Assembly: GCF_006345805.1 (NCBI RefSeq)
Contig: NW_021825151.1
Coordinates: forward strand, 1-16,784
Length of the DNA stretch: 16,784 bases
Source: Octopus sinensis
Lineage: Eukaryota
Direction of reading: 5' to 3'
This document shows, one piece after another, positions 1-16,784 of the stretch. The number at the start of each line of letters is the position of its first letter. Position 1 is the first letter of the stretch. The notes beneath the pieces were generated by a model. It was given only the letters and a program-made list of their open reading frames with translations, searched no databases and was not told the origin of the DNA. The position numbers and the translations under genes are program-made.

Positions 1-870
1 CTGCCGTCGCTCGAACGCAAACCAGGGATCCCAACAAGTCGAGCGACGACGATTGACCAGGCTCAATCGATCGGCGAAGGTTCGCCACGGAACCCAGAGA
101 GGAGGGAGATAACAACAACAATAACAGCAGGAAGAGATACAGAGAGAGACACACAGAGGCAAGGCAATCGGCTTACATTTAACCCACTAGTTTATAACAC
201 TTTATAATTGTTACAACATCAAATAAATCAAGATACATATCAGGTACATCAAAGGGGAAATACATGCAAGAAACAACACATCAAAGCATTCGGGTACAAT
301 AACAGTTCAGATTGATGCAATATACAGTCCGGAGACAACAGTTGTTTCAAATCACATTAAAACCATATACAGTTCAATGTTCATTTAAAGACTACAACAG
401 AGTCTTTCTCCTCTCTTCAACACATCGATTATTTCTCCTTTTTTTCCCCTTCTTTCTCTTTTTAGTTCAACACATCAATTCAAAGCATAAATAAACACAT
501 ACCGTACAGTTCCTACTATAATAGCTGTGCCTTCCCTCCGCCGTAATCTCCCTCACTTCCTTAATCTTCTCTGCCTGACTTCCTTTGTCACAGCAGAACA
601 ACCATTACTAAACTCGCTGTATCATCCCAACTGTTGCCTGTCTCTCACAAACTCCCAATTGCCAACTGCTTGCCTTGAATCCCAAAATGCTGACTGCTTC
701 TCACAAACTGAACTGCTTATTTAAGGGGGTAGCCTTCAAATGAACCTTAATTCACCCGAAAGGGTCGGGGGCGGTCCCCAGAGCTAATTAATCTACCCGC
801 ATCTGGATGAACAATGGATTCATTCCCAAAAGTAGGTCGCCAGCTCTGTCGTTAAGTTGAACTCACAACA
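1..870. mobile_element. Solo-LTR-like element, copy 1 (left end just outside the window)
   Basis: Ends in ...CACAACA followed by ATAT (871-874). Colinear with 5452-5957 apart from 367 extra bp (143-509). Interrupts a flank that is continuous in type-D introns (cagcatcaaatattactttc). Confidence 0.65.
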
Positions 871-916: not shown

Positions 917-988
917 ATTGTCGTCAACTTCGAAAGCCCGTTGAATATACCTTGTTTCATGGTTGAAATTTTGTTGCCGTCAAGATTT
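917..988 (-). CDS. LRR exon E12 (type A): NLDGNKISTMKQGIFNGLSKLTT(I/M)
   Basis: Acceptor cttctatAG, donor GTAAGT (911-916), 72 nt, open. Confidence 0.92.
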
Positions 989-3647
989 CTATAGAAGTAA
1001 AGAAAGAGTAAAATAGATTATACGGAAAGTGTTTGTGATAGAACATCAAACAATATGGCTTTAGAATGAAAGGAAGAAAAAGGAAGACATATACCGTAGA
1101 AGAAGAAGAAGAAGAAGAAGAAGAGAAGAAGAAGACGAAATAAGAAGAGGGGGAGGAGAGGAAGGGAGAAGAAAGGGAGGAGGAATAAGAGAAGAAAATG
1201 AAGGAGGAGGAGGACGAAGGGGTGGAAGAGGAGAATGCGGGGAGAAGGAGTAAAGGAGGGTGAAGGAGGAGAGAAGAGAGGAGATGCAGAATAGGCAAGA
1301 GGAGGAGGCGAATGAGAAAAGGAGAAACAAGTAGAAGAGAAAGAAAAAGGAGAAAATTGACGAGATAAAAGTACAGGAGCAAGTTTATAAAAGATGAAGA
1401 AGAAGAAGAAGAAGAAGAAGAAGAAAAAAGAAGGAGAAAAAATGAGGAGGAGGAGGAAGAGAAGAAGAAGAAGAAGAAGAAGAAGAAGAAGAAGGAGACG
1501 AAGGAGAAGAAGACGCATGAGAAATAAGAGGAGGAGGGGGAAGGAAAAAGAAAGGAAGAAGGAAAAGGAGAAGAAAATGAAGGGTGAGGATGGGGAGCAT
1601 TAAGAGGCGGAAGATCAGAATGCGGGGAGAAGGAGATAATGTAGGGTGAAGGAGGGGAGGCGTGGAGGAGAGAGGAGGAGTGAAGAGACGAGGGGCAGAA
1701 TGGGCAGGAGGAGCAGGCGAATGAGAAAAGGAGAAACGTATAGAAGAGAGAGAAAAGAACGAGAAAATTGACGAGATAAAAGAACAGGAGCAAGTTTGAG
1801 AAAGATGAAGAAGAAGAAGAGGAAGAAGAAGAAGGAGAAGAAGGAGGGGAAGAAGAAGAAGAAGAAGAAGAATAAGAATAATAATAAGAAGGAGGAGGAG
1901 GAGGAGGAGAAGTAGATGGAGGAGGAGGAGGAGGAGGAGAAGAAGGAGGAGAAGGAAAAGAAGGAGGAGAAGGAAAAGAAGGAGGAGGTGGAGGAGGAGG
2001 AGGAAAAGAAGAAGGAGAAGAAGAAGCAGAAAAGCAGAAGAAGAAGAAGGAAAATAATAAGAAGAAGAATCAAGAGAAAATTATTTCGGTGGAAGTGTGG
2101 ATAAATAACCACAAGGCACCACAAAATAAAGAGAACAATGTGAAACAAAAAATAGTAGAAAAACATAAGTATTATATTAACACTGCAGACACACTCATAC
2201 ATATATGAACATACACGTTTTCAGGAATAGAATTTTGCTGCAATCAATTATCATTGATAGTCATTGTCATGTTCAGACACAATCAAATAAATATAGCACG
2301 AATATGAAAAGTGATTATGACTTCAAGTAATAGGGAGTGAGAACAAATAGAAATCAGGGAATATTTAAATTAAAGACACATTATATTCCTCATGTATAAA
2401 CGACAACATTGAAAGGACTTACAGATATTGTAAGCTGTGAAGGTCTTGAAACATTTCTTCTTCAATACTCGAAATTTTATTCTCCTGAAGATACCTGAAG
2501 CAGGAAAAAATGTTGCTTATTTTGACGTAGTATGGAATTGCAATAAAAGATGAAATATTGTTCTTTTTGTATAGGAGGAAACCATAGGAAAATAAAATGA
2601 TAAGAAGTAGAAGAAGAAGAAGAAGAAGAAGAAGAAGGAGAAGAAGAAGGAAGAGGAGGAGTAGGACTAGAAGAAGAAGAAGCTGGAAGAGGAGAAGAAG
2701 AAGACGAACGAGGAGTAGAAGAGAAGGTAAAGGAGAAGGAGGAGGGGGATGATGCGAGGTAGAAGAAGAATGAAAAGAAGAAGGGGAAGAAGAATCAGGA
2801 GAAGAAGAAAACTAGATGAACAAGAAGAAGAAGTATTAGACGAAGAAGAAGAAAAAGAGATGAGAGGAGGTAAAGAACAAGAAAAAGAAAGAAGAGAGAA
2901 AGCGAGAAAAATAATATAATAATAAATAAGAAGAAATGACAAGAAAGGTCTTATAAGAAGAAGAAGAAAAACAGATGAGATGATGTAAAGAAGAAAAAAA
3001 AAACTAAAGAAGAAGAAGAAGAAAGAAGAAAAGAAGAAGAAAACAAGAAAGAAAACAGAGAAAAAAGAATAAAAAGAGAGAAAAGAAAAAAGACAATAAA
3101 ACAGAACAACAACAACAGCATCAAGATCAAGTAGAACAAGATTAAGAAGAAGAAGAACATGAACACGAAGAAGATAGTGCACTCTGAAAGTTTATTCGTT
3201 TCTGAGAGAAAATATATCAGCATCAAAGTATACATTCAGATAATAGTATTAAGAAACTGAACGAACTTACAATGTTGTTAAATTCGAAAGCTTCGTGAAG
3301 GTCCCTTCTTTGATGGTTGCAATGTTGTTGTGGCCAAGATCTCTATAACAGTAACGAAAGATTAAAATAGATTATATGGAAAATATTAGTGATACAACAT
3401 CAAACACAGGAGCTTTACAATGAACGAAAGAAAAAGAAATGAGATAACAAAGTAGACGAAGAAGAAGAAGAACAACAACAACAAAAACAACAACGAAAAC
3501 GAAAAGAAGAACAAGAACAAGAAGATGAATGAAAAGAGGAATAAGGAGGTGGAGGAGGGGACGAGAAGGGGAGAAAGTGGAAAAGAAGAAAAAGAAAAAT
3601 AGCAGTGCTAGGGGGACAAACAGAGACACACAATCACACACACATAC

Positions 3648-3686
<39 letters not shown>

Positions 3687-3978
3687 CATATATACGACAG
3701 GCTTCTTTCAGTTTCCGTCTACCAAATCCACTCACAAGGCATTGGTCGGCCCGGGGCTATAGCAGAAGACTTACCACACAGCTACTTACCACACAGCCAC
3801 TCCTGCAGGCGCAGTAGTGGCTGTGTGGTAAGTAGCTTGCTAACCAACCACACGGTTGCGGTTCAGTCCCACTGCGTGGCATCTTGGGCAAGTGTCTTCT
3901 GCTATAGCCCCGGGCCGCGACAATGCCTTGTGAGTGGATTTGGTAGACGGAAACTGAAAGAAGCCTGTCGTATATATG

Positions 3979-4028
<50 letters not shown>

Positions 4029-4887
4029 ATTGTGTGTCTGTGTTTGTCCCCCTAGCACTGCTTGACAACCGATGCTGGTGTGTTTACGTCCCCGTCACTT
4101 AGCGGTTCGGCAAAAAGAGACCGATAGAATAAGTACTAAAAAGGTGGTGCACCAGCATGGCCGCAGTCAAATGACTGAAACAAGTAAAAGAGTAAAGAGA
4201 GAGTAAGGGGAATTTGAGGAAAAAATATATCAGAGGATGAAGAAAATAAGGGCGTAAGTTGATGAAAAAGAAGCAGAAGAATGAAGAATAAAGTGACGTG
4301 AGAGGAAGAGGGGCTAGGAGACGGTAGGGGAGGAGGGAGTGATGTAGGAGAGGGTAGGGTATGAGAGAGGTGGTGCATGAGCAGGAACAGGGGGACAAGT
4401 AGAATAGGAGGAAGATGCTGAAGAGAAGGAAAAAAGAAATGTGATAAGCAGAAATACCTGGAGTAAGTTTATGAAAAATGAGAAGGAGAGGAAGAAGAAG
4501 AAGAAGAAGAGGAAGTTTAAGGAAAAGAAAATGAAGGAGGAGATGAAGGAGGCAGAGGAGGAAGGGGAAGTAGAAGAGGAGAAGAAGAAGACGACGACGA
4601 AGAAGAGAAAGATATGGAAGATGAAGAAAAAGGAGATGTAGATTAGAAGAAGAAGAAGAAGGAGAAGAAGAAGAAAAAAAGAAAGAAGAAGAAAGAGAAG
4701 GAGGTGGATGAGAAGAAGAAGAAGAAGACGAGGAAGAAGACGAAGAAGAAGAAGAAGAAGAAGTAGAAGATGAAGAAGAAGAAGGAAAAAAGAAGAAGAA
4801 GGAGAAAAAGAAGAAGATGAAGAAAAAGAAGAAAAGAAGAACATGAGTAAAAAGCAGAAGAAGAAGAGTAAAAAGCAGAAGAAGGAG

Positions 4888-4925
<38 letters not shown>

Positions 4926-7258
4926 GGAGAAGAAGAAGAACAAGAACAAGAATAATTCGATGTTGAATGACAATATCGAAAGGCGAAGGAGAATATTGAA
5001 ATAAGAAATGAAGGAGGAGACAAATTATAAAATAAAGGAAGTACATAGTCACATTTCACACGAAACTACACTTATATATGAACATACACATATACTTCAG
5101 CTGAAAATATTTGAGGCAAACATGTAAACTCACACACGTAATCATTTTTGATGAAAATTCAAATAAAAATCATTGAAATTTGAGGATGAAAATTGATTTC
5201 GGTTGACCTGAAGTGAAACAAAGCAACTGCAGTAAAGGAACATTAAATTTGTCCTATTATTTCACGTTCTCTCTCAATTTTTCACACATTGTCTCGCTCT
5301 CTTACTCCCACTTTGCATCTTCCAAACTCCTGTTCGGTCCCCAAATTTATATTGATTTTGCTTATTGCAGTCTGAATGTTCATACATTTGTGAGTATATA
5401 TATCAGCATCATATTGTTACGGAATCCCCGAAAGTTGTTACGGAATCCCGCCTGCCGTCGCTCGAACTCGAACCCGGGATCCCAACAAGTCGAGCGACGA
5501 CGATTGACAAGGCTCGATCGATCGGCGATTGTTCGCCACGGAACCCAGAGAGGAGAGAGATAACCACAACAACAACAGCAGCAGGAAGCGATACAGTTCC
5601 TACTACAATAGCTGTGCCTTCCCTCCGCCGTAATCTCCCTCACTTCCTTAATCTTCTCTGCCTGACTTCCTTTGTCACAGAAGAACAACCATTACTAAAC
5701 TCGCTGTATTATCCCAACTGTTGCCTGTTTCTCACAAACTCCCAACTGCCGACTGCTTGCCTTGAATCCCAAATGCTGACTGCCTCTCACAAACGGAACG
5801 GCTTATTTAAGGGGGTAGCCTTCAAATGAACCTTAATTCACCCGAAAGGGTCGGGGGGGTTGCCCCAGAGCTAATTAATCAACCCGCATCTGGAAGAACA
5901 ATGGATTCATTCCCAAAAGTAGGTCGCCAGCTCTGTCCTTAAGATGAACTCACAACAATATATTACTTTCAGAAATTATTATCAAGAAACTGAACGAACT
6001 TACAATGTCGTCAAATTCGAAAGCCCGTTGAATATTCCTTGTTTCATGGTTGAAATATTGTTGCCGTTAAGATCTCTATTGAAGTAAAGAAAGAGTAAAA
6101 TAGATTATACGGAAAATATTTGTGATAAAGCGTCAAACAATATGGCATTAGAATGAAAGGAAGAAAAAGGAAGACATATACCGTACAAGAAGAAGAAGAA
6201 GAAGAAGAAGAAGAAGAAGAAAAATAAGACGAAATAAGAAGAGGGGGAGGGAGGAAGGGAGAAGAAAGGGAGGAGGAATAAGAGAAGAAAATGAAGGAGG
6301 AGGAGGACGAAGGGGTGGAAGAGGAGAATGCGGAGAGAAGGAGTAAAAGGAGGGTGAAGGAAGAGAGAAGAAAGGGATGCAGAATAGGCAGGAGGAGGAG
6401 GCGAATGAGAAAAGGAGTAACAAGTAGAAGAGAAAGAAAAAGAAGGAGAAAATTGACGAGATAAAAGTACAGTAGCAAGTTTATGAAATATGAAGAAGAA
6501 GAAGAAGAAAAAGAAGAAGAGGAAAAGAAGAAGAAGAAGAAAAGAGAAAAGAATGAGAAGGAGGAGGAGGAGAGAAGAAGAAGAAGAAGAAGAAAAAGAA
6601 GAAGAAGAGGAAAAAGTAGAAGAAGAAGAAGAAGAAGGGGAAAAGAATGAGGAAGAGGAGGAGAAGTAGAAGAACAACAACAACAATAACAGGATGCAGG
6701 AGAAATAAGAGGCGGAGGGGGAAGGAAGAAGAAAGGAAGAAGGAAAAGGAGAAGAAAATGAAGGAGGGGGATTAGGAGGATGTAGAGGCGGAAGATCAGA
6801 ATGCGGGGAGAAGGAGAAAATGTAGGATAAGGAGGGGAGGCGTGGAGGAGGGAGAAGGAGTGAAGAGAGAAAGGGCAGAATGGGCAGGAGGAGCAGGCGA
6901 ATGAGAAAAGGAGAAACGTATAGAAAAGAAAGAAAAAGAAGGAGAAAATTGATGAGATAAAAGAACAGGAGCAAGTTTGGGAAAGATGAAGAAGAAGAAG
7001 AAGAAGGAGGAGAAGAAGGAAGAAGAAGAAGAAGAAGGAGGTGGAGGAGGAGGAGAAGTAGATGGAGAGGGGAGGAGGAGGAGAAGTAGAATAATAATAA
7101 TAATAAGAAGAAGAAGAAGTAAGAAGAAGAAGAAGAAAAAGAAAAAGTAGAAGAAGAAGAAAAAGAAGAAGAAGACAAAGAAGAAGAAGAAAAACGAAGA
7201 AGGAGAAAAAGAAGAGGAAAAGAAAAGAAGTGGCAGAAGAAGAAGGAAAAGAAGTAGT

Positions 7259-7289
<31 letters not shown>

Positions 7290-9926
7290 GAAGAAGAAGA
7301 AGAAGAAGAAGAAGAAGAAAAAAAGAAGAAGAAGAAGAAGAAGGAGGAGGGGGAGGAAAAGAAGAAGAAGGAGAAAAAGAAGAAGAAAAAGAAGAAGAAG
7401 AAGAAAATGAAGAAAATGAAAAAGAAGACATTAATAATCATGGTGTTCAAGAAGATGAAATGTAGTCAAAGAAATAACAGGAGATATTTTAGGGAGAGGG
7501 AAGAAACGTTTCAAGGAGAGAACATGGCTGAAAACTCAGGGAATATAAATTTAATACAAATTTAAATACAAATCGTTGAAATTTGGGAATCAAAAATTAG
7601 TTAAAGTGTCAAGAATTGAAACAAAGCAACTGCAATAAAGGAACATTAAATTTGTCCTTTTATTTCACATTCTCTCTCAATTCCTCCCTCTTTCTCTCAT
7701 TGTGTCTTGCTCTCTTAATCACACTTTGTATCTTCCTAAATCATGTTCGGTTCCCGATTTTGTTTAGTGCTGTCTGAGAGTTTATACGGTTAAGAGTGTA
7801 TTTATCAGCATCAAATATTACTTTCAAACAGAGTATCAGGAAACTGAACGAACTTACAATGACTTTAAATTCTTAAGCCCCATGAATACACCATGTTTGA
7901 TGGTTGAAATGTTGTTGGCGCCAAGATACCTGTTGCAATAAAGAACGAGTAAAAATTATTAGATTGAAAATATTTGTGATGCTACATAAAAAATAAGAAG
8001 AAAAAGAAAAAGACAAGTAAAAGAAGACGAAGCAGAAGATGTAACCGAAAAAGAAGACAAAATGGAAAAAACAGAAAAGAAGAAGAAGAAGAAAAGAGGA
8101 AGAGGATGAGGGGGAGAAGGAGGATAAAAAGAAGGGGGAGAGGAGAAGAAAAAAGGTGATGAAGAAGAAAAAGGAGAAGGAAAAGTACAAGAACAAGAAT
8201 AACAAGAATTACAAGAAGAACAAGAAGGAGAAGAAGTACAAGAAGAAGAAAAAGTAGGAGAAGAAAAAGCGGAAGAAGAGGTTGAAGAGGAAAGAAGAAG
8301 AACAAAACCAAGAAGAAGTAAAAGAAGAAGAAAATGAAGAAGAGGAAGAAGGAGAGAAAACAGTAGAGGATAAGAGGGAAGGTGGAAAAGAGGAGGAGGG
8401 GTAAAAGGCAAAATGGCGAGGGCGGGAAGAAGAAGAAAAAGGTGCGTAGATAAGGAGAGGCGAGGTGAGAAGAGAGGATGAGAAGGATGGGCAAGAGGAG
8501 AAGGAGAATGATAATAGGAGAAAGATATAGAAAAGAAAGAAATAAAAGAGAAAATTCACAAGGAGAAAGTGTGGTAGTAAGTTTATGACAGAAGAAGAAG
8601 AAGAAAAAGAAGAAGAAGAAGAAGAAGAATAAGAAGAAGAAGAAAAAGAATAAGAAGAAGAAGAAGAAGAAAAAGAGAAGAAGACTAGGATAAGAAGAAG
8701 AAAAGAAGAAGAAGAAAGGTGTAGAAGAATAAGAGTAATTAGAAAAGAGAACTAGAAGAAGAAGTACAGAAGAAGAACTAAAGAAGAGAAGAAAAGAAGA
8801 AAAAAAGATCAGGGGAAATATTTCGTGAAGTGTGGATAAATAACCACACGGAACCACAGAATAAAGAGAACAATGTGAAACAAAAATAGTAGAAAAACAT
8901 AAGTATTATATTAACACTGCAGACACACTCATACATATATGAACATACACGTTTCCAGGAATAGAATTTTGCTGCAATCAATTATCAACAGATAGTCATT
9001 GTCATGTTCAGACACAATCAAATAAATATAGCACGAATATGGAAAGTGATTATGACTTCCAGTAATAGGGAGTGTTAATAAATAGAATTCAGGGAATATT
9101 TAAATTAAAGACACATTATATTCCTCATGTATAAACGACAACAGAGAAAGGACTTACAGATCTTGTAAGCTGCGAAGGTCTTGAAACACAACTTCCTCAA
9201 TCCTCGAAATTTTATTGTCCTGAAGATACCTGAAGCAGGAAACAATGTTGCTTATTTTGACGTAGTATGGAATTGCAATAAAAGATGAAATATTGTTCTT
9301 TTTGTATTGGAAAAAAACCATAGGAAAATAAAATGACAAGAAGAAGAAGAAGAAGAAGAAGAAGAAGAAGAAAAAGAAAAAGTAAAAGGAAAAGAATAAT
9401 AATAATAATAATAATAAGAAGAAGAAGAAGAAGTAGAAAAATAAGAAGAAGAAGAAGAAGAAGAAGGAAAAGAAAAAGAAGAAGAAGAAAAAGAAGAAAA
9501 AAAGAAGAAGAAGTAGAAGAAGGAAAAGAAGAAGAAGAAGAAAAAGAAAAAGAAAAAGATAAAGAAGAAGAAGAAGAAGATGACGAAGAAGAAGAAAAAG
9601 AAGAAGAAGAAGAGGAAAAAGAAGAAGGAAAAGAAGAAGAAGAAGGAGGTGGATTAGAAGAAGAAGAGAAAAGAAGAAGAAGGAGAAGAAGAACAGGAAG
9701 AAGACAAAGAAGTTTAAGGAAAAGAAAATGAAGGAGGAGATGAAGGAGGCAGAGGAGACGTGGGAGAAAAATAAGAAAAAGACGAAAAAGAGAAAGGTAT
9801 GAAAGATGAAGAAACAGAAGGAGAATGAGAATTAGAGAATAAGTAAGTATTAGTAGTAGTATAGTATAGTGTAGTAGTAGAAGAAGAAAAGAAGAAGAAG
9901 AAGAAGGAGAAGACGAAAAGAAGAAG

Positions 9927-9958
<32 letters not shown>

Positions 9959-10610
9959 AAGAAGAAGAGACATTATAATCATAGTGTTCAAGAAGATGAA
10001 ATAGAAAATGTAGTCAAAGAAATAACCGAGATATTTTAGGGGAGGGAAGAAACGTTGAGGGAGAGAACATGGCTGAAAACTCAGGTATACAAATTTAATA
10101 CACAATTAAATACAATCTTTGAAATTTGGAAAATCCAAAATGAGTTAATGTGTCAAGAATTGACACAAAGCAACTGCAATAAAGGAACATTAAATTTGTT
10201 CTTTTATTTCACATTCTCTCTCAATTCCTCCCTCTTTCTCTCATTGGATCTTGCTCTCTTAATCCTACATTGTATCTTCCTAAATCATGTTTGATTCCCG
10301 AGTTTGTTTAGTGGAGTCTGAAAGTTTATGCGGTTAAGAGTGTATATATCAGCATCAGATATTACTTTCAAACAAAGTATCAGGAAATTGAACGAACTTA
10401 CATTGTCTTTAAATTCTTAAGCCCCATGAATATACCATGTTTGATGGTTGAAATGCTGTTGGCGCCAAGATTCCTGTTGCAGTAAAGAACGAGTAAAAAT
10501 TATTCGATGGAAAATATTTGTGATACTACAAAAAGAAGAAGAAGACGAAGAAGAAGAAGAAAAAGACGAAGAAGAAGAAGAAGAAGAAGAAGAAGAAGAA
10601 GAAGAAGAAG

Positions 10611-10643
<33 letters not shown>

Positions 10644-13018
10644 AAGAAGAAGACATTAATAATCATAGGGTTCAAGAAGATGAAATAGAAAATGTAGTCA
10701 AAGAAATAACAGGAGATATTTTAGGGAGAGGGAAGAAACGTCTCAGGGAGAGAACATGGCTGAAAACTCAGGGAATACAAATTTAATACAAAATTTAATA
10801 CAAATCTTTGAAATTTGGGAATCCAAAATGAGTTAATAATGTGTCCGAATTGAAAGAAACAAAGCAACTGTAATAACGGATCATTAAATTTGTCTTTTAT
10901 TTCATATTCTCTCTCAATTCCTCCCTCTTTCCTCTCATTGTGTCTTGCTCTCTTAAACCCACATTGTGTCTTCCTAAATCATGTTTGGTTCCCGAGTTTG
11001 TCTAGTGCAGTCTGAGAGTTTATACGGTTAAGAGTGTATTTATCAGCATCAAATATTACTTTCAAACAGAGTATCAGGAAACTGAACGAACTTACAATGT
11101 CTTTAAATTCTTAAGCCCCATGAATATACCATGTTTGATGGTTGAAATGTTGTTGGCGCCAAGATACCTGTTGCAGTAAAGAACGAGTAAAAATTATTAG
11201 ATGGAAAATATCTCTGATACTACAAAAAGAAGAAGAAGAGAAGAAGAAGACGAAGAAGAAAAATACGAAGCAGCAGAATTAAACGAAAAGAAGACGAAAA
11301 AAGAAGAAGAAGAAGATGAAGAAGATAAAAAAACATAAAAGAAGAGAAGGAAGAAGCAGAAGAAAAAGAAGAGGAAAAAAGGAGAAAGATGATGAGGGGG
11401 AGAAGGAAGTGAGGAGAATAAAATAAGAAGGTGAGGAAGTAGAAAAAAAAGAAGTACAAGAAGAACAAGAACAAGAAAGAGAAGAAGTACAGGAAGAAGA
11501 AGAAAAAGTTGAAGGAGGAGAAAAAGTAGAAGAAGAGGTAGAAGAGGAAAGAACAGGAAGAACAAGGACATATATGTAGAAGAGGAAGTAGAAGCACAAG
11601 AAGAAGAAGAAGAAGAAGTAAAAGAAGAAGAAGAAGAAGAAGAAGGAGGAGGAGGAGGAAGAGTAGAAGAAGAAGATGGAGATGATGAAGAAGGAGAAGA
11701 AGAAGAGAAAACAGTAGGATGAGGAGAAGGAGGGTGGAGAAAAGGAAAGGATGAGGAGGGGTAAAACGGAGAATGGCGAGGGGGGAAGAAGAAGAAAAAG
11801 GTGTGTGGAGAATGAGAGTCGAGGAGAGAAGAGAGGATGAGAAGAATGGGCAAGAGTAGAAGGAGAATGATAATAGGAGAAGGAATATAGAAGAGAAAGA
11901 AATAAAAGAGAAAATTCACGAGGAGATAGTGCGGTAGTAAGTTTATGAAATAAGAAGAAGAAGAAGAAGAAAAAAAGGAAAAGAAGATGAAAATGCATAA
12001 TAATAATAATAATAATAAAAATAATAATAATATAATATAATAATAATAATGATAATAATAATAATGAAAATGTAGATAGAAGCCACACAACAATGCCTAA
12101 TAATATAAACACCAGGACTTACAAACACATATAACATACAGAAAATTGCACTACTAGGCACTGCACACATCCTACGCAGAACACTTTCCATACAATAACC
12201 ATCAGAGCATCACAACAAATCACAGCAGATACCTAAAACACACAGAGCTGCGCTCGGTAGTGAAGTGAAAGCACGCTATAAAAATAAAACTACTGAATAA
12301 TAATAAGAAGAAGAAGAAGAAAAAGAAAAAGAAGAAGGAGAAAAAGAAATAGAAAAGAAGAAGCAGGAAAAAAAGAAGAAGAAGAATAAAGAAAGAGGAG
12401 AAAGAACTAAAGAAAAGAAGAAGAAGAAGAAGAAGAGAAATAAAAAGATAGAAGAAGAAGAAGTAGAACGAAAAAGAAGAAGAGGGAGAAGGAGAGTACA
12501 AAGCAAAGAACTCTAGAAGAAGAAGCAGAAGAACAAGAAGAAGAAGAAGTAGAAGCAAAAGAAGAAGAAGAAGGAGAAGGAGATGAAGAAGAAGAAGGAG
12601 AAGAAGAAAAAGAAGAACTAGAAGAAGAAGCGGAAGAAGAAGAACAAGAAGAAGAAGAAGAGGAAGTAGAAGAAACGAAGAATATGTAGAAGAAGAAGAA
12701 GAAGAAGAGAAAACAGTAGGATGAGGAGAGGGAGGGTGGAGAAAAGGAGAGGATAGAGGAGAGGTAAAAGGGAGAATGGCGAGTGGGGAAGAAGAAGAAA
12801 AAGGTTTGTGGAGTGTGAGAGTCGAGGAGAGAAGAGAGGATGAGAAGAATGGGCAAGAGGCGACGGGGAATTATAATAGGAGAAAGATATAGAAAAGAAA
12901 GAAATAAAAGAGAAAATTCACGAGGAGAAAGTGCGGTAGTAAGTTTATGAAAGAAGATGTAGAAGAATAAGGAAGAAGAAGAAGAAGAAGAATGGCAAAA
13001 GGAAAGAAGATAAAATGC

Positions 13019-13054
<36 letters not shown>

Positions 13055-15407
13055 TATATTAATAATAATAATAATATACTAATAAAATAATGAGAAGAAG
13101 AAAGAAGAAGAAGAAGAAGAAGAAAAGAAAAGAAGATGGTTAGAAAAAGAAAGAGAAATAAGAAGAGAAAAGGAAAAGAATAAGAAGAGAAAAGAAAAAA
13201 GAAGAAGAAGAAGAAGAAAAGGAAAGAAGAGTAAGAAAAAAGAAGAACTAAAATAAGAAGATTAAAGTAGAATACGAAGAAAAAAGTAAGAAGAATGAAG
13301 AAGAAAAAGAATAACTAGAAGAATATAGAGAAGAGTAAGAACTAGAAAGAGAAGGAAGAAGAACGAAGAAGAAGAAAGAAGATCAGGGGAATTATTTCGT
13401 GGGGAAGTGTGGATAATAACCACACGGCCCACAGAATAAAGAAGAACAATGTTAAACAAACAACAGTAAAAAAACATAAGTATTTTATTAACACTGCATA
13501 CACACTCATACAGATATGAAACATACACGTTTTCAGGAATGAATTTTTTGATGCAGACGATTATCACTGCCATTCAATTTCTGTCAGACACCATCAAATA
13601 AATGGATGCACAAGATGAAAGTGGGATTAGTGTGTAATGTTCAATAATTTCAGACACAATCAAATAAATATAGCACGAATATGGAAAGTGATTATGACTT
13701 CAAGTAATAGGGAGAATAAATAGATATCAGGGAATATTAAAACTAAGACCATTATATTCCTCATGTATAAACGACAACATTGAAAGGACTTACAGATATT
13801 GTAAGCTGTGAAGGTCTTGAAACATAACTTTCTCAATCCTCGAAATTTTATTGTTCTGAAGATATCTGAAGGAAGAAACAATGTTGCTTATTTTGACGTA
13901 GTATGGAATTGCAATAAAAGATGAAATATTGTTCTTTTTGTATAGGAAGAAAACCATAGGAAAATAAAATGACAAGAAGATAAAGAAGGAGAAGAAGAAG
14001 AAGAAGAAGAAGAAGAAAGAATGAAAGAAGAAGTATTAGAAGAAGAAGAAGAAAAAGAGATGAAAGAAGGCAAAGAAGAAGAAAAAGTTAGAAGTAGAAA
14101 CGAAGAAGAGAAGAAAAAGAAGAAGAAGAAAACAAGGAGAAGAAGAAGAAAAAAAGGAGAAGAAGAAGAAAGCAAGGAGAAGAAGAAAGAAGGAGAAAAA
14201 GAAGAACAAGAAGAAGAACAACAACAATAGCAACAGCATCAAGATCAAGTAGAACAAGATTAAGAAGAAGAAGAACATGAACAAGAAGAAGATAGTGAAC
14301 TCTGAAAGTTTATTCGTTTCTAAGAGAAAATATATCAGCATCAAAATATACATTCAGATAATAGTATTAAGAAACTGAACGAACTTACAATGTTGTTAAA
14401 TTCGAAAGCTTCGTGAAGGTCCCTTCTTTGATTGTTGCAATGTTGTTACTTTGCAGATCTCTATAGCAGTAACGAAAGATTAAAATAGATTATATGGAAA
14501 ATATTAGTGATACAACATCAAACACAGGAGCTTTACAATGAACGAAAGAAAAAGAAAAGAGATAACGAAGAAGAAGAAGAAGAAGAGGAAGAAAAACAAC
14601 AACAACAACAAAAACGAAAAGAAGAACAAGAAGAAGAAGAAGAATGAAAAGTGGAATAAGGAGGTGGAGGAGGGCAGGAGAAGTGGAGAAAGGGGAAAAG
14701 AAGGAAAAAAAGAATAATGGATAGTGGAGGAAAAGAAATCAGAAGATGAAAAAAATAAGGGAGTAAGTTGATGAAATAGAAGAAGAAGAAAACAAGGAGA
14801 AGAAGAAGAAAACAAGGAGAAGAAGAAGAAAGCAAGGAGAAGAAGAAGAAGGAGAAAAAGATGAACAAGAAGAAGAAGAACAACAATAGCAACAGCATCA
14901 AGATCAAGTAGAACATTGGATCTTGCTCTCTTAATCCCACATTGTATCTTCCTAAATCATGTTCGGTTACCGAGTTTGTTTAGTGCTGTCTGAGAGTTTA
15001 TACGGTTAAGAGTGTATTTATCAGCATCAAATATTACTTTCAAACAGAGTATCAGGAACTGAACGAACTTACAATGACTTTAAATTCTTAAGCCCCATGA
15101 ATATACCATGTTTGATGGTTGAAATGTTGTTGGCGCCAAGATACCTATTGCAGTAAAGAACGAGTAAAAATTATTAGATGGAAAATATTTGTGATACTAC
15201 AAAAGAAGAAGAAGAAGAAGAAGAAGAAGAAGAAGAGAAGAAGAAAAAGAAGAACAAGAAGTACAAGAAGAACAAGAACAAGAAGTAGGAGAAGGAGAAG
15301 GGGAAATAGAAGAACAAGAAGAAGAAGAAGTAAAAGTAGAAGAAGAAGAAGGAGGAGGAAGAGGAGGAAGAGAAGAAGGAGAAGAAGAAGAGAAGAAGAA
15401 GAGAAGA

Positions 15408-15445
<38 letters not shown>

Positions 15446-15935
15446 AAGAAGAAGAAGAAGTAGAAGAAGAAAAAGAAGAAGAAGAAAAAGAAGAAGACAC
15501 ATTAAAAATCATGGTGTTCAAGAAGATGAAATAGATAATGTAGTCAAAGAAATAACAGGAGATATTTTAGGGAGACGGAAGAAACGTTTGAAAACTCAGG
15601 GAATACAAATTTAATGCAAATTTAAATTTGGGAATCCAAATGAGTTAATGTGTCAAGAATTAAAACAAAGCAAATTCTCTCTCAATGCCTCCCTCTCTCT
15701 CTCATTGTGTCTTGCTCACTTAATCCCCCTTTGTATCTTCTCATATTTATGTTTGATTCCCGAGTTTGTTTAGTGCAGTCTGAAAGTTTATACGGTTAAG
15801 AGGGTATATATCAGCATCAAATATTACTTTCAAACAGTGTATCAGGAAACTGAACGAACTTACAATGTCTTTAAATTCTTAAACCCCATGAATATACCAT
15901 GTTTGATGGTTGAAATGTTGTTGGCGCCAAGATTC
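917..15935 (-). CDS. Internal part of a multi-exon LRR protein gene: 12 x 72-nt exons giving about 288 aa of tandem typical LRRs (LGR/relaxin-receptor/GRL101- or Slit-like exon architecture); extends beyond the window on both sides
   Basis: Twelve AG..GT-bounded 72-nt segments, all stop-free in phase 2 and all matching LxxLxLxxNxIxxIxxxxFxxL. One 72-nt phase-2 exon per LRR is the established organisation of LGR4-6/RXFP and Slit genes; the family assignment is inference. Confidence 0.88.
989..1805. repeat. Type-A acceptor-side block (acceptor flank plus two purine-rich modules), duplicated at about 6076-6990
   Basis: Colinear blocks: ggaagaaaaaggaagacatataccgta, gaaaattgacgagataaaagtacag, taagaggcggaagatcagaatgcggggagaagg. 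Confidence 0.85.
2066..2422. repeat. Type-B donor-side intron flank (about 350 bp); other copies at 8807-9157 and 13381-13793
   Basis: Shared blocks such as ataagtattatattaacactgcagacacactcataca and cattatattcctcatgtataaacgacaaca. Confidence 0.9.
2423..2494 (-). CDS. LRR exon E11 (type B): YLQENKISSIEEEMFQDLHSLQY(L)
   Basis: Acceptor cctgcttcAG, donor GTAAGT (2417-2422), 72 nt, open. Confidence 0.92.
3107..3270. repeat. Type-C donor-side intron flank; copy at about 14219-14388 and an orphan fragment at about 14785-14915
   Basis: cagcatcaagatcaagtagaaca...; 4 mismatches over about 150 bp between the two full copies. Confidence 0.9.
3271..3342 (-). CDS. LRR exon E10 (type C): DLGHNNIATIKEGTFTKLSNLTT(L)
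   Basis: Acceptor ctgttatAG, donor GTAAGT (3265-3270), 72 nt, open. Confidence 0.92.
3601..3806 (-). mobile_element. Inverted partial copy of the same SINE, head-to-head, lacking the B-box segment and the 3' end
   Basis: 3601-3770 is the near-perfect reverse complement of 3894-4062; 3780-3801 is the reverse complement of 3816-3837. Confidence 0.85.
3808..4200 (+). mobile_element. tRNA-derived SINE of the octopod type (near full length, with internal (TA)n/(TG)n)
   Basis: A-box-like TGGCTGTGTGG (3818-3828), B-box-like GGTTCAGTCCC (3860-3870), CORE-like ttgggcaagt, 3' tail gactgaaacaagtaaaagagtaaaga. Absent from the paralogous C intron (about 14700-14760). Family recognised from memory, not by search. 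Confidence 0.8.
4888..4923 (+). repeat. (AAC)12 microsatellite
   Basis: Read directly. Confidence 0.95.
5415..5957. mobile_element. Solo-LTR-like element, copy 2, internally deleted; TGTT...AACA termini, 4-bp TSD ATAT
   Basis: ATAT at 5411-5414 and 5958-5961. TG...CA ends with a 4-bp TSD are typical of Ty3/gypsy LTRs (established); no internal gag/pol is present. Confidence 0.72.
6004..6075 (-). CDS. LRR exon E9 (type A): DLNGNNISTMKQGIFNGLSNLTT(L)
   Basis: Acceptor cttcaatAG, donor GTAAGT (5998-6003), 72 nt, open. Confidence 0.92.
7424..7857. repeat. Type-D donor-side intron flank (about 430 bp); other copies at 9969-10401, 10652-11095, 14914-15072 (truncated), 15496-15863; diverged homolog in the type-A flank about 5150-5414
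   Basis: Direct visual alignment, e.g. aaagcaactgcaataaaggaacattaaatttgt and tcagcatcaaatattactttcaaaca. Confidence 0.9.
7858..7929 (-). CDS. LRR exon E8 (type D, Y-start): YLGANNISTIKHGVFMGLKNLKS(L)
   Basis: Acceptor ttgcaacAG, donor GTAAGT (7852-7857), 72 nt, open. Confidence 0.92.
8340..8590. repeat. Purine-rich intronic module (about 250 bp); close copies at about 11700-11950 and 12700-12950; more distant relatives at 1105-1395, 1520-1805, 4200-4475, 6190-6490, 6700-6990, 14640-14775, 16080-16410
   Basis: Shared gaaaacagtag...atgggcaagag...gagaaaattcac(g/a)aggaga...gtagtaagtttatga. Confidence 0.75.
9158..9229 (-). CDS. LRR exon E7 (type B): YLQDNKISRIEEVVFQDLRSLQD(L)
   Basis: Acceptor cctgcttcAG, donor GTAAGT (9152-9157), 72 nt; peptide visible in supplied ORF 9154..9339. 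Confidence 0.92.
10402..10473 (-). CDS. LRR exon E6 (type D, N-start): NLGANSISTIKHGIFMGLKNLKT(M/I)
   Basis: Acceptor ctgcaacAG, donor GTAAGT (10396-10401), 72 nt, open; ends in AT, so the junction codon is ATG or ATA. Confidence 0.9.
11096..11167 (-). CDS. LRR exon E5 (type D, Y-start): YLGANNISTIKHGIFMGLKNLKT(L)
   Basis: Acceptor ctgcaacAG, donor GTAAGT (11090-11095), 72 nt, open. Confidence 0.92.
11998..12065 (+). repeat. Imperfect (TAA)n microsatellite; paralogous tract at about 13018-13090
   Basis: Both tracts follow gaagat(g)aaaatgca. Confidence 0.9.
12066..12303 (+). mobile_element. 5'-truncated 3' end of an RLE-type non-LTR retrotransposon (R4/Dong-like) inserted in a (TAA)n tract
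   Basis: 12109-12198 reads TPGLTNTYNIQKIALLGTAHILRRTLSIQ*, resembling the C-terminal QKxxLLGTAxILR motif of R4-group elements. It is followed by a 3' UTR and a TAA tail, with (TAA)n on both sides. Confidence 0.75.
13794..13865 (-). CDS. LRR exon E4 (type B): YLQNNKISRIEKVMFQDLHSLQY(L)
   Basis: Acceptor ttccttcAG, donor GTAAGT (13788-13793), 72 nt; peptide visible at the end of supplied ORF 13790..13975. Confidence 0.92.
14389..14460 (-). CDS. LRR exon E3 (type C): DLQSNNIATIKEGTFTKLSNLTT(L)
   Basis: Acceptor ctgctatAG, donor GTAAGT (14383-14388), 72 nt, open. Confidence 0.92.
15073..15144 (-). CDS. LRR exon E2 (type D, Y-start): YLGANNISTIKHGIFMGLKNLKS(L)
   Basis: Acceptor ctgcaatAG, donor GTAAGT (15067-15072), 72 nt, open. 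Confidence 0.92.
15411..15445 (+). repeat. (AGT)n microsatellite, about 11 units
   Basis: Read directly. Confidence 0.95.
15864..15935 (-). CDS. LRR exon E1 (type D, N-start): NLGANNISTIKHGIFMGFKNLKT(L)
   Basis: Acceptor cttcaacAG (ct at 15936-15937), donor GTAAGT (acttac 15858-15863), 72 nt, open; framework Leu replaced by Phe (TTT). Confidence 0.9.
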
Positions 15936-16784
15936 CTGTTGAAGTAAAGAACGAGTAAAAAAAGATTAGATGGAAAATATTTGTGATACTACATGAAACA
16001 CTGTGGCTTCAGAATGAAAGGAAGAAAAATAAAGACAGATAACAATGATGAAGGAGAAGAAAAAGAAGAAGTAGGATGAAAAGGTGGAGAAGAGGAAGGA
16101 GGGAGAAGAAGGAGAAAAAGAAGCGATCAAGAAGCGGAAGTGGAAGAGATGGGAGAAAAGTGACGAAGTAGAAAGTAAGGGATTAAATTGTTGAAACAGT
16201 AGGTTGTGAAAAGAGTCGAGGATAGCTGAGTCGAGATGAGAAGAGTTGAGGTCAAGATAATTGAGGGATGGAGAGTGAAGAAGGATGCAGGAAGGCAAGA
16301 GTAGGAGGAGCAGGAGGGGGAGGAGTAGATGAATGAGATAGAAAGGAAAAAGTAGAAGACAGAAAGAGAAGAAAAGTTCGAAGCAGAAAGTACGGGAGCA
16401 AGTTTATGAAAAAAGCGATGTAGGAGAAGAAGTAAAAAAAAAAGAAGAAGAAGAAGAAGAAGAAGAAAGAGATGACGAAAATGAAGAAGAAGAAGAAGAT
16501 AAACAAGAAGAAAAATAAGAAGAAAAAGAAGAAGGTGGAGGAGCCGGAGTAGGAGCAGCGGGGAGAGCTGGAGGAGGAGAAGAAGAAGATGAAGAAAAAG
16601 AAGTAAAAGAAGAAGAAGAAGAATATGTAGAAGAAGAAGAAGAAGAAGAAGAAGGAGAAGAAGAAGAAGGAGGATGAGGAGGAGGAGAAGGAGGAGGACG
16701 AGGAGAAGAAGAAAAGAAGAAGAAAAAGCAGAAGAAGAAAAGCAGAAGAAGAAGAAGAAGAAGAAGAAGAAGAAAGAGAATAAG

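What the first reader, a model, noticed from the sequence alone, without database searches (positions are those of the whole stretch)
989..15863. Introns are chimeras: cassettes (acceptor flank-exon-donor flank) are re-joined through (GAA)n tracts
Seen: the donor half of each intron matches the type of the upstream exon and the acceptor half matches the downstream exon. The near-identical type-A acceptor block is joined to a B donor flank in 989-2422 but to a D donor flank in 6076-7857. The B acceptor flank joins a C donor flank (2495-3270, 13866-14388) or a D donor flank (9230-10401). Eleven junctions show seven different type pairs (DD, DC, CB, BD, DB, DA/BA, AC). Except at 14914, the switch falls within GAA-rich low-complexity sequence. 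Inference: same-orientation GAA tracts act as universal homology joints for unequal crossover, giving microsatellite-mediated exon shuffling instead of simple periodic tandem duplication.
Basis: partly seen in the sequence, partly recalled or inferred. Interest (0 to 1): 0.8.

Follow-up and report, generated by a model that had tools for sequence, protein, structure and literature searches.

The report
Octopus LRR exon cassettes joined at GAA tracts
This is part of an octopus gene in which each 72-base exon encodes one leucine-rich repeat, and exon-plus-flank cassettes have been duplicated, deleted and re-ordered with nearly all joins lying in GAA-rich intron centres; that fits repeat-mediated exon shuffling but does not prove it.

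Summary
The minus strand carries 12 intact exons, each exactly 72 nt, phase 1-1, with AG/GTAAGT sites, one 24-residue LRR each. They fall into four types (A, B, C, D). Each type keeps its own acceptor and donor intron flanks whatever its neighbour. Every intron is acceptor flank, then purine-rich core, then donor flank.

For it: about 10 of 12 junction events that I could separate, in the window and one Octopus sinensis relative, lie in GAA/TTC sequence. One is pinned to a pure (GAA)24 run. The tracts all have one orientation and occur only in the LRR-array introns.

Against over-reading it:
- The tract is an inherited part of the roughly 1-kb repeat unit. An O. vulgaris paralogue is a simple periodic array with a 75-114-nt tract at a fixed place.
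- The cores make up 57% of intron length.
- Blocks of several cassettes were copied whole.
- Two events have breakpoints in unique sequence.
- Same-type cassettes are mosaics, so exchange also happens inside cassettes.

Best reading: homology-limited ectopic exchange, in which GAA cores are the only sequence shared across cassette types. This is a new variant of known LRR exon shuffling. Interest is moderate.

The parts
917..988 (-). Exon A1 (72 nt, phase 1-1, one LRR: NLDGNKISTMKQGIFNGLSKLTT)
2423..2494 (-). Exon B2 (YLQENKISSIEEEMFQDLHSLQY)
3271..3342 (-). Exon C3 (DLGHNNIATIKEGTFTKLSNLTT)
6004..6075 (-). Exon A4
7858..7929 (-). Exon D5 (YLGANNISTIKHGVFMGLKNLKS)
9158..9229 (-). Exon B6
10402..10473 (-). 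Exon D7
11096..11167 (-). Exon D8
13794..13865 (-). Exon B9
14389..14460 (-). Exon C10
15073..15144 (-). Exon D11
15864..15935 (-). Exon D12
989..2069 (-). A acceptor block: 109-nt unique flank (989-1097), then a core with two purine-rich P units (1186-1400, 1568-1811). It is the paralogue of 6076-7265.
2070..2422 (-). B donor flank (other copies at 8816-9157 and 13390-13793). Over the first 238 aligned nt next to the exon it differs from the O. sinensis L001 copy at only 2 positions, 0 of them in the first 120.
2495..2600 (-). B acceptor flank (other copies at 9230-9336 and 13866-13972). All copies end at ...AAAATAAAATGA, directly followed by GAA repeats.
3100..3270 (-). C donor flank (other copy at 14223-14388; a partial third copy at 14877-14913)
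3343..3601 (-). C acceptor flank. It continues at 4200-4281 after the inserted palindromic repeat. Paralogue: 14461-14790.
4484..4636 (-). Purine-rich island on the far side of A/D-type donor flanks. The copy at 9681-9800 in I6 matches at 92% over 77 nt, with a 40-nt stretch at 100%. Three copies occur in L001.
4954..5420 (-). A donor flank, distal part. It is 80% identical to the donor flank of the O. vulgaris paralogue L002, and 5156-5414 is 74% identical to the D donor flank.
7418..7857 (-). D donor flank, about 440 nt (other copies at 9960-10401, 10644-11095 and 15489-15863)
10474..10537 (-). D acceptor flank, about 64 nt (other copies at 7930-7995, 11168-11231 and 15145-15207). It is cut at the same base in D7, D8 and D11 and in both L001 copies, whereas D12 (15936-16041) keeps about 40 more ancestral nt.
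10568..10639 (+). Pure (GAA)24, the whole switch interval of intron I7, lying between an I8-like acceptor-side start and an I6-like donor-side end
9364..9680 (+). GAA-rich switch interval of I6, between the B acceptor flank and the donor-side island. The C cassette is missing here compared with the B-C-X arrangement.
7100..7418 (+). GAA-rich switch interval of I4, between the end of the A acceptor block and the D donor flank. The left edge near 7100 is my reading of shared motifs (raw sequence); BLAST carries the A-block homology to 7265 and the last specific tile match ends near 7018.
15420..15497 (+). Approximate switch interval of I11, made of (GTA)n and GAA, between an I5/I8-like acceptor-side core and the D donor flank. 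The limits are my reading; the I5/I8 homology runs to about 15485-15496.
14761..14913 (-). Copy (95-96% identical) of I9 14110-14262, comprising core plus the start of the C donor flank, sitting inside I10. Its left join to C-acceptor-side sequence lies in a 19-nt GAA-like shared string near 14775-14790.
14913..14914 (.). Sharp join in unique sequence, with CA microhomology, between the C-donor fragment and a D donor flank truncated to its last 159 nt (14914-15072)
11288..13107 (+). Internal duplication in I8 (11288-12082 ~ 12305-13107, 79% identical). It contains a P unit and an (ATA)n run, and a dispersed repeat lies between the two copies.

Best explanation
The window is part of the LRR array of an octopus gene. 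It belongs to the family annotated in O. sinensis and O. vulgaris as 'slit homolog-like' or 'adhesion GPCR G6-like'. The gene is read from the minus strand, and each 72-nt phase-1 exon encodes one LRR.

The array descends from a tandemly repeated unit of about 1 kb: exon, then donor flank, then a (TTC)n tract, then a ~100-nt acceptor flank. The units diverged into four cassette types. Later, blocks of one to three cassettes were duplicated and deleted.

Exchange is limited by homology. Between cassettes of the same type it happens anywhere, giving gene-conversion mosaics within flanks and exons. Between cassettes of different types the only long shared sequences are the same-orientation GAA/TTC tracts and the purine-rich units embedded in them. 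Misaligned recombination, replication slippage or break repair therefore joins cassettes there. The known fragility of GAA/TTC tracts probably adds to this.

Shown: the cassette anatomy, the block copies, where the joins lie, the mosaicism, and the fact that the tract is inherited with the unit.

Inferred: that the tracts cause or channel the rearrangements rather than merely hiding the breakpoints.
For: - Exon anatomy and the open 287-residue array. Family assignment rests on Octopus hits at 56-67% identity.
- Flanks follow the exon type.
- Tracts have one orientation. In two relatives they occupy 13-62% of each 2-kb stretch across the LRR-array part but mostly 0%, and at most 12%, in 2-kb stretches of the remaining 36-62 kb of the same loci.
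- The ancestral-type unit is seen in L002: three units 96-97.5% identical over about 1.05 kb, each with one 75-114-nt pyrimidine run at the same position.
- Joins resolved to tract sequence: (GAA)24 in I7, a 19-nt GAA-like overlap in I10, and the TTC-like acceptor tract in L001.
- C-cassette loss with both ends in tracts is seen at two different places: I6 in the window and L001 6730-8668.
- By my count about 10 of 12 junction events lie in cores. The binomial P is 5e-4 if the chance that both ends fall in a core is 0.33.
- Mosaic same-type cassettes: B2 against L001 sB8774 differs at 3/105 (acceptor flank), 10/72 (exon) and 0/120 (donor flank), and informative sites conflict.
- GAA/TTC tracts form triplexes, induce double-strand breaks and undergo large contractions in yeast (PMC3681665, PMC6983365).
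Against: - Cores are 57% of intron length and are by nature unalignable, so breakpoints there cannot be placed and some enrichment is expected. P rises to 0.06 under the most lenient null.
- My event count is a judgement, and the events may not be independent.
- Tracts may have grown after the joins formed.
- The longest pure run is only 24 repeats, and most tracts are interrupted at 65-91% match. From my own knowledge, not checked here, this is below the lengths usually linked to strong fragility.
- Two events used unique sequence.
- Only one haplotype of one locus and two paralogous loci were available. No allelic structural variants were seen.
Confidence: 0.6

Rival explanations
1. Passive tract. 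The GAA/TTC tract is simply the fast-evolving centre of every intron, inherited with the unit. Duplications and deletions have breakpoints at random, or are ordinary unequal crossovers between whole homologous units. Microsatellite turnover then erases homology in the middle of each intron. Common descent plus gene conversion that cannot cross length-variable tracts keeps the flanks type-specific. In this reading the tracts are boundaries of homogenisation, not joints.
For: - The tract is present at a fixed place in a simple periodic paralogue.
- Flank-to-core boundaries are identical to the base in copies with different partners, so they are inherited.
- Cores are 57% of intron length.
- Multi-cassette blocks were copied with their introns intact.
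- Conversion patches stop within cassettes.
- Breakpoints outside GAA exist.
Against: - Heterotypic adjacencies (D-D, B-D, A-D) need a join between non-homologous intron halves. Random breakpoints should then leave ragged or hybrid flanks more often than the one case seen in the window.
- I7 is resolved to a pure (GAA)24 run, and two other joins show GAA-type overlap.
- Independent C-cassette losses both end in tracts.
Confidence: 0.3
2. The tracts are kept for RNA-level reasons. On the transcript they are long (UUC)n polypyrimidine runs upstream of every acceptor, and they may bind splicing repressors and allow skipping of individual LRR exons. Their position at cassette borders would then be a by-product. 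This reading does not exclude either of the others.
For: - All tracts have one orientation, pyrimidine on the RNA.
- The exons are symmetric, so any of them can be skipped in frame.
- Several O. sinensis hits annotated as isoforms share an identical N-terminus but differ in LRR content. I did not check that they come from one gene.
- The L001 gene model (P0021) skips the intact exons at 3160 and 3745.
- LRR exon modularity is a known basis for alternative splicing (PMC6642158).
Against: - No RNA data could be examined.
- Tract lengths vary from about 75 nt to more than 1 kb, with no conserved motif beyond composition.
- Orientation bias is equally explained by copying of a single ancestral unit.
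Confidence: 0.15
3. Assembly artefact. Mis-joined reads across GAA tracts in a repetitive array could create chimeric introns that do not exist in the animal.
For: Long low-complexity tracts and near-identical cassettes are hard to assemble, and the source and read support of the window are unknown.
Against: - An independent O. sinensis contig shows the same cassette types.
- That contig also shows four of the same intron arrangements: D donor next to C acceptor, C donor next to B acceptor, B donor next to D acceptor, and D donor next to P units and the A acceptor.
- All 12 exons and their splice sites are intact.
- Paralogous introns differ by many substitutions, not by clean swaps.
Confidence: 0.03

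Closest known systems
Tetrahymena LRR genes with arrays of exactly 90-bp exons (Xiong et al. 2019, PMC6564038)
   Same: - One repeat unit per exon, with fixed exon length and constant intron phase.
- Exon-plus-intron units are tandemly repeated.
- Exon number varies among paralogues.
- The paper proposes exon shuffling by unequal crossing over, with a LINE-like element sitting next to units. Here a truncated LINE lies inside the D donor flank of the O. sinensis relative and was copied with the cassette.
   Different: - The exons here are 72 nt with phase-1 introns, in an animal gene.
- The introns are about 0.5-2.7 kb and dominated by one-orientation GAA/TTC tracts.
- Joins between unlike cassettes map to those tracts, not to exons or to a retrotransposon.
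Exonic modularity of LRR domains in animal genes such as Slit and NLR families (Hoss et al. 2019, PMC6642158, citing Little et al. 2002)
   Same: Short LRR-encoding exons that can be skipped in frame, as described in that paper. The closest annotated Octopus relatives are named 'slit homolog-like'. That Slit LRR exons are themselves about 72 nt is my recollection; a literature search for it found nothing relevant.
   Different: Those reports concern splicing, not re-ordering of cassettes in the genome. They describe no microsatellite-rich introns and no type-specific intron flanks.
Repeat-mediated exon duplication and deletion by non-allelic recombination in introns (for example Alu-mediated events in human genes). 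This is textbook knowledge and was not checked here.
   Same: Dispersed same-orientation repeats in introns provide the homology for unequal exchange, which adds or removes whole in-frame exons.
   Different: The repeats here are microsatellite tracts and a purine-rich minisatellite-like unit, not transposable elements. They are also part of the duplicated unit itself.
GAA/TTC triplex-forming repeats as fragile, recombination-prone sites (PMC3681665, PMC6983365)
   Same: Homopurine-homopyrimidine GAA tracts. In yeast these are known to induce breaks, rearrangements and large contractions.
   Different: The tracts here are mostly interrupted and short in pure form (at most 24 repeats). No direct evidence of breakage exists for this locus.
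Schistosoma mansoni polymorphic mucins, SmPoMuc (PMC2576457)
   Same: A rapidly evolving gene family whose full text discusses exon shuffling and unequal crossing over.
   Different: It is a different protein fold, and as far as I recall no role has been described for a microsatellite joint.
Lamprey and hagfish variable lymphocyte receptors (own knowledge; one hagfish VLR-A appeared as a distant hit)
   Same: 24-residue LRR cassettes are recombined to vary a receptor's binding surface.
   Different: VLR cassettes are non-spliced donor fragments copied somatically into an incomplete gene through short coding homologies. The cassettes here are ordinary germline exons with splice sites.

Membership tests
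Modular one-LRR-per-exon gene (Slit-like exon modularity) | Each exon encodes exactly one LRR (72 nt, 24 residues) matching LxxLxLxxNxI | tested here: met
   All 12 exons are 72 nt, and their translations fit the LRR consensus. Pfam LRR families are precomputed on the relatives.
Modular one-LRR-per-exon gene (Slit-like exon modularity) | Symmetric intron phase, so that any exon can be added or dropped in frame | tested here: met
   All exons are phase 1-1, and the concatenation is open over 287 residues.
Modular one-LRR-per-exon gene (Slit-like exon modularity) | The exons are actually spliced into mRNA | not testable with these tools
   No RNA data were available. Canonical AG/GTAAGT sites are present. 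Exons of the same types in L001 are part of an NCBI gene model.
Octopus-specific adhesion-GPCR expansion with N-terminal LRRs (Ritschard et al. 2019, group 3) | GPS motif and adhesion 7TM domain in the same gene | not testable with these tools
   The window holds only LRR exons. One O. vulgaris relative is named 'adhesion GPCR G6-like' (P0106, 62% identity over 28% of the query). P0021 and P0106 carry long C-terminal regions after the LRRs, but I ran no domain search on them. The paper reports LRRs in 5 of 22 group members.
Exon shuffling by unequal crossing over in an exon/intron tandem array (Tetrahymena-type) | Exon and adjacent intron sequence are duplicated together as a unit | tested here: met
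   Type-specific flanks travel with the exons. The L002 units are 96-97.5% identical over their whole ~1.05 kb.
Exon shuffling by unequal crossing over in an exon/intron tandem array (Tetrahymena-type) | Variable number and order of units among paralogues | tested here: met
   The window holds 12 exons, L001 about 7 (two of them degenerate), and L002 at least 4.
Fragile, recombination-prone GAA/TTC repeats | Long uninterrupted homopurine mirror repeat (tens to hundreds of pure GAA units) | tested here: inconclusive
   The longest pure run is (GAA)24. TRF arrays reach 40 copies at 91% match and 90-310 copies at 65-80% match.
Fragile, recombination-prone GAA/TTC repeats | Rearrangement breakpoints are enriched in the tracts | tested here: inconclusive
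   About 10 of 12 events lie in cores, but cores are 57% of intron length. P ranges from 5e-4 to 0.06 depending on the null.
VLR-like cassette assembly | Cassettes lack splice sites and are copied into an incomplete germline gene | tested here: not met
   Every cassette is a normal exon with acceptor and donor sites, in one reading direction.

The most novel reading that the evidence does not exclude
The one-orientation (TTC)n tracts are not just tolerated. They are maintained as built-in joints that speed up germline, or even somatic, gain, loss and re-ordering of LRR cassettes in an octopus-specific family of neural and sensory surface receptors. Together with the faster-than-intron change of the exons, this would give a rapidly diversifying recognition repertoire.
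Probability: 0.1. Interest if true: 0.85.

Novelty: new variant of a known kind. Interest (0 to 1): 0.5.

Why it matters
Exon shuffling through intron recombination is a textbook idea, but there are few cases where the sequence that carries the exchange can be pointed to. This locus offers a concrete, testable case. It has symmetric single-repeat exons, type-specific flanks that mark each cassette, and a single kind of shared intron sequence where unlike cassettes meet.

If tract-mediated exchange is confirmed, it would explain how an octopus-specific receptor family varies its LRR number and order so quickly. It would also link microsatellite instability to protein-domain evolution. If it is not confirmed, the locus is still a clean example of how inherited low-complexity sequence can mimic recombination 'joints'.

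Tried and rejected
- **Rfam and tRNA scans of the window** found nothing, so the inserted repeats could not be named.
- **Gene look-ups for more relatives.** Exact-product look-ups for P0001, P0003 and P0007 returned no locus. Only two related loci could be fetched.
- **No annotated product for the window's own gene.** No annotated protein contains the window's own exon order, and the best hit is 58% identical. The same locus in another assembly or haplotype could not be reached, so the allelic breakpoint test was not possible.
- **L001 as the same locus.** I considered that L001 might be the same locus in a sister species, because the cassette order is roughly collinear. I rejected it. The C-type exon is only 85% identical while some intron stretches are 100% identical, which fits paralogues that exchange patches.
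- **A tandem duplication at 14913/14914.** I considered that this join came from a single tandem duplication. I rejected it because the sequence after the join does not continue like any upstream D unit. A C-cassette duplication followed by a deletion fits better.
- **Ungapped flank comparison.** Ungapped exon-versus-flank identities were distorted by indels, and I replaced them with gapped comparisons.
- **Literature.** A search for Slit genes with 72-bp exons found nothing relevant in the held library.

Full report
**What is there.** The window is eukaryotic. It is read from the minus strand as a run of 12 exons, each exactly 72 nt. Every exon has an AG acceptor and a GTAAGT donor, starts and ends in phase 1, and has no stop. 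Joined, the exons give an open 287-residue array of twelve 24-residue leucine-rich repeats.

The best protein matches are Octopus sinensis and O. vulgaris proteins named 'slit homolog-like' or 'adhesion GPCR G6-like', at 56-67% identity. These relatives have a signal peptide, an N-terminal cap, a variable number of LRRs, a C-terminal cap and a cysteine-rich region. Two of them carry long C-terminal regions after that. An octopus-specific expansion of adhesion GPCRs, some with LRRs and with signs of positive selection, has been described (PMC6408891). Whether this gene has the receptor part cannot be told from the window.

**The observation.** The exons fall into four types. Along the + strand the order is A B C A D B D D B C D D. 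Module searches and 80-nt tile painting show that each type has its own intron flanks:
- A, C and D acceptor flanks are 64-118 nt and about 80% alike across types. The B acceptor flank is 106 nt and distinct.
- The D donor flank is about 440 nt, the B donor flank about 350 nt and the C donor flank about 170 nt.
- The A donor flank is D-like and carries an inserted repeat.

The A acceptor block (989-2069 ~ 6076-7265) meets a B donor flank in one intron and a D donor flank in the other. The B acceptor flank meets a C donor flank twice and a D donor flank once.

Cores make up 57% of the length of the eleven complete introns, while strict microsatellite makes up 26%. The rest of each core is largely a conserved purine-rich unit that recurs in many introns. 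All tracts have one orientation: 56 runs of (GAA)5 or longer on the + strand and no (TTC)5 run.

**Where the tract comes from.** I fetched two related loci.
- **L001** is an O. sinensis contig carrying B, D, A-like and C-like cassettes whose flanks are mostly 85-100% identical to the window's (about 81-82% for the C-like acceptor flank).
- **L002** is an O. vulgaris paralogue. It has four 72-nt LRR exons at a regular spacing of about 1.05 kb. Three of its units are 96-97.5% identical over their full length. Each has one pyrimidine run of 75-114 nt at the same place, about 95 nt upstream of the acceptor.

In both loci the pyrimidine-rich tracts fill 13-62% of each 2-kb stretch across the array part. 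They fill mostly 0%, and at most 12%, of the 2-kb stretches in the remaining tens of kilobases. So the tract is an inherited component of the repeat unit, copied in one orientation with every duplication. Simple periodic duplication also occurs in this family.

In the window, the borders between flank and tract are identical to the base in copies that have different partners. For example, the D acceptor flank ends ...GATACTACA followed by aaaagaagaag in D7, D8 and D11 and in both L001 copies, while D12 keeps about 40 more ancestral bases. These borders were made once and then copied. They are not repeated independent breaks.

**History that can be read.** Several introns are copies of one another over their whole length, core included:
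- I1, I5 and I8: A- or D-type acceptor flank, purine-rich unit, B donor flank.
- I2 and I9: B acceptor flank to C donor flank.
- The A block: 505-2069 ~ 5592-7265.

This points to an older three-cassette period (X-B-C, where X is A or D) and to copying of multi-cassette blocks. L001 likewise shows 2-4-kb block duplications at 82-94% identity.

Six introns remain whose two halves come from different classes: I3, I4, I6, I7, I10 and I11. Three of them could be resolved further.
- **I7.** The acceptor-side start matches I8 and the donor-side end matches I6. What lies between is a pure (GAA)24 run, 10568-10639.
- **I6.** It keeps the B acceptor flank and, after about 316 nt of GAA-rich sequence, an island that otherwise lies next to the C acceptor side in I3. 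The match is 92% over 77 nt, with a 40-nt stretch at 100%. The C cassette has therefore been lost with both ends in tracts.
- **L001.** It shows the same kind of C-less intron at a different array position, keeping the islands from both sides. It also has a B acceptor flank whose exon was lost, with the break 10 nt before the AG, in the TTC-like polypyrimidine tract of the acceptor.
- **I10.** It is compound. C-acceptor-side sequence meets a 95-96% copy of I9 14110-14262 inside a 19-nt GAA-like string shared by both parents. That copy then ends at 14913/14914 against a truncated D donor flank, with only CA in common.

A second case outside GAA is in L001. There a 267-bp B-exon fragment sits inside a truncated LINE, with a short chance homology at one end.

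**How strong is the case for GAA joints?** By my count about 10 of 12 separable events have both ends in tract or core sequence. If the chance of that is 0.33 (0.57 squared), the binomial P is 5e-4. At 0.45 it is 0.008, and at 0.57 it is 0.056. The count involves judgement, the events may share history, and tracts may have grown after the joins formed. I therefore treat this as moderate support.

The mechanism is plausible on outside knowledge, since GAA/TTC tracts form triplexes, induce breaks and contract in yeast (PMC3681665, PMC6983365). The pure runs here are short, however: at most 24 repeats.

**Exchange inside cassettes.** Same-type cassettes are mosaics.
- Among D cassettes the acceptor flank groups D7 with the O. 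sinensis copies (97%, against 91% for D5). The middle of the donor flank groups D5 with them (97%, against 88% for D7). Informative sites conflict.
- For B cassettes, window B2 and L001 sB8774 differ at 3/105 positions in the acceptor flank, 10/72 in the exon, and 0/120 and 2/118 in the first two donor segments. Exon sites group the L001 copy with B9, while donor sites group it with B2.

So homologous exchange or conversion does occur in unique sequence, between cassettes that are alike.

**Best explanation.** Taken together, the simplest account is that exchange is limited by homology. Like cassettes exchange anywhere. Unlike cassettes share only the tracts and the purine-rich units, so those act as the de facto joints. 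It drops the claim that this replaces periodic duplication, and it does not require the tracts to be special beyond being shared and possibly fragile.

**Rivals.**
- A purely passive tract, with random breaks and homology erased afterwards, remains possible (about 0.3).
- A splicing role for the (UUC)n runs is not exclusive of the others and was not tested.
- An assembly artefact is unlikely. An independent assembly shows the same cassette types and four of the same intron arrangements, and all exons are intact.

**Comparison with what is known.** One-repeat-per-exon LRR genes and their in-frame modularity are known (PMC6642158). Massive LRR exon shuffling by unequal crossing over, with an associated LINE, has been described in Tetrahymena (PMC6564038). 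The new element here is that joins between unlike cassettes map to a one-orientation microsatellite inherited with the unit, in a cephalopod receptor family. I class it as a new variant of a known kind, of moderate interest.

Noticed in passing
window exons against their flanks (e.g. 2423-2494 against 2070-2422 and 2495-2600); L001 8668-9191: Exons differ more than the intron sequence right next to them. In seven non-overlapping same-type pairs the exon difference is 7.7% against 4.4% for flanks (Fisher P = 0.007). There are 30 amino-acid-changing differences against 5 silent ones, on about 55 and 14 sites. The extreme case is B2 against L001 sB8774: 10/72 in the exon and 0/120 in the adjacent donor flank. 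This suggests diversifying selection on the LRRs, or exon-sized conversion patches.
   Followed up: partly
window 3601-4062 (to about 4200): A 462-nt near-perfect palindrome (arms 83% complementary) with (TA)n runs is inserted in the C acceptor side of I3. Copies of the arm occur in L001 (29154-29567) and L002 (46407-46669), so it is a dispersed repeat present here as an inverted pair. Rfam and tRNA scans found nothing.
   Followed up: partly
window 12060-12300: An insert found only once in the window lies between the two copies of the internal I8 duplication, next to an (ATA)n run. It is 97.5% identical over 160 nt to L002 67676-67835 and 88-91% identical to two places in L001, so it is a young dispersed (SINE-like) repeat.
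   Followed up: partly
window 1-870 and 5452-5957: A repeat is inserted about 46 nt from the exon in the donor flank of both A cassettes, so the A duplication is younger than the insertion. The first copy has 362 extra bases (143-504). The A-like cassette of L001 lacks the insert.
   Followed up: partly
L001 3292-4596, 9569-10619 and 1-600: A 5'-truncated LINE, with a reverse-transcriptase-like reading frame and a (TAAC)n tail, sits about 58 nt into the D donor flank in the O. sinensis relative. It was copied three times together with the cassette.
   Followed up: partly
L001 3730-3996: A 267-bp piece holding an intact B exon with its splice sites (98.5% identical to L001 2534-2799) is inserted inside that LINE. 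The left end lies at an 18-nt chance similarity (tgtgtctgaac[a/g]tgtcaa) and the right end at a 4-nt overlap. The source copy at 2549 has indels and looks dead, so a live exon may have been rescued by the move.
   Followed up: partly
L001 exons 3160-3231 and 3745-3816: The annotated O. sinensis product P0021 joins exons 1249, 8774 and 9437 and skips two intact LRR exons between them. In addition, several O. sinensis hits annotated as isoforms share an identical N-terminus but differ in LRR content. This may reflect cassette-exon skipping or imperfect gene models.
   Followed up: no
window 1186-1400, 1568-1811, 6279-6496, 6749-6992, 8334-8600, 11681-11960, 12681-12960, 16273-16411: A purine-rich unit, at least about 215 bp long, ends in ...GCAAGTTTATGAAA and is followed by GAA repeats. 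It recurs in the acceptor-side half of A- and D-type introns, sometimes in tandem. It behaves like a minisatellite embedded in the tract, and its origin is unknown.
   Followed up: partly
window 15413-15445, 11997-12065, 13019-13091, 4886-4925: Other trinucleotide runs are embedded in the GAA cores: (GTA)11, two (ATA)n runs of about 24 units, and (CAA)13. They look like local offshoots of the GAA tract.
   Followed up: no
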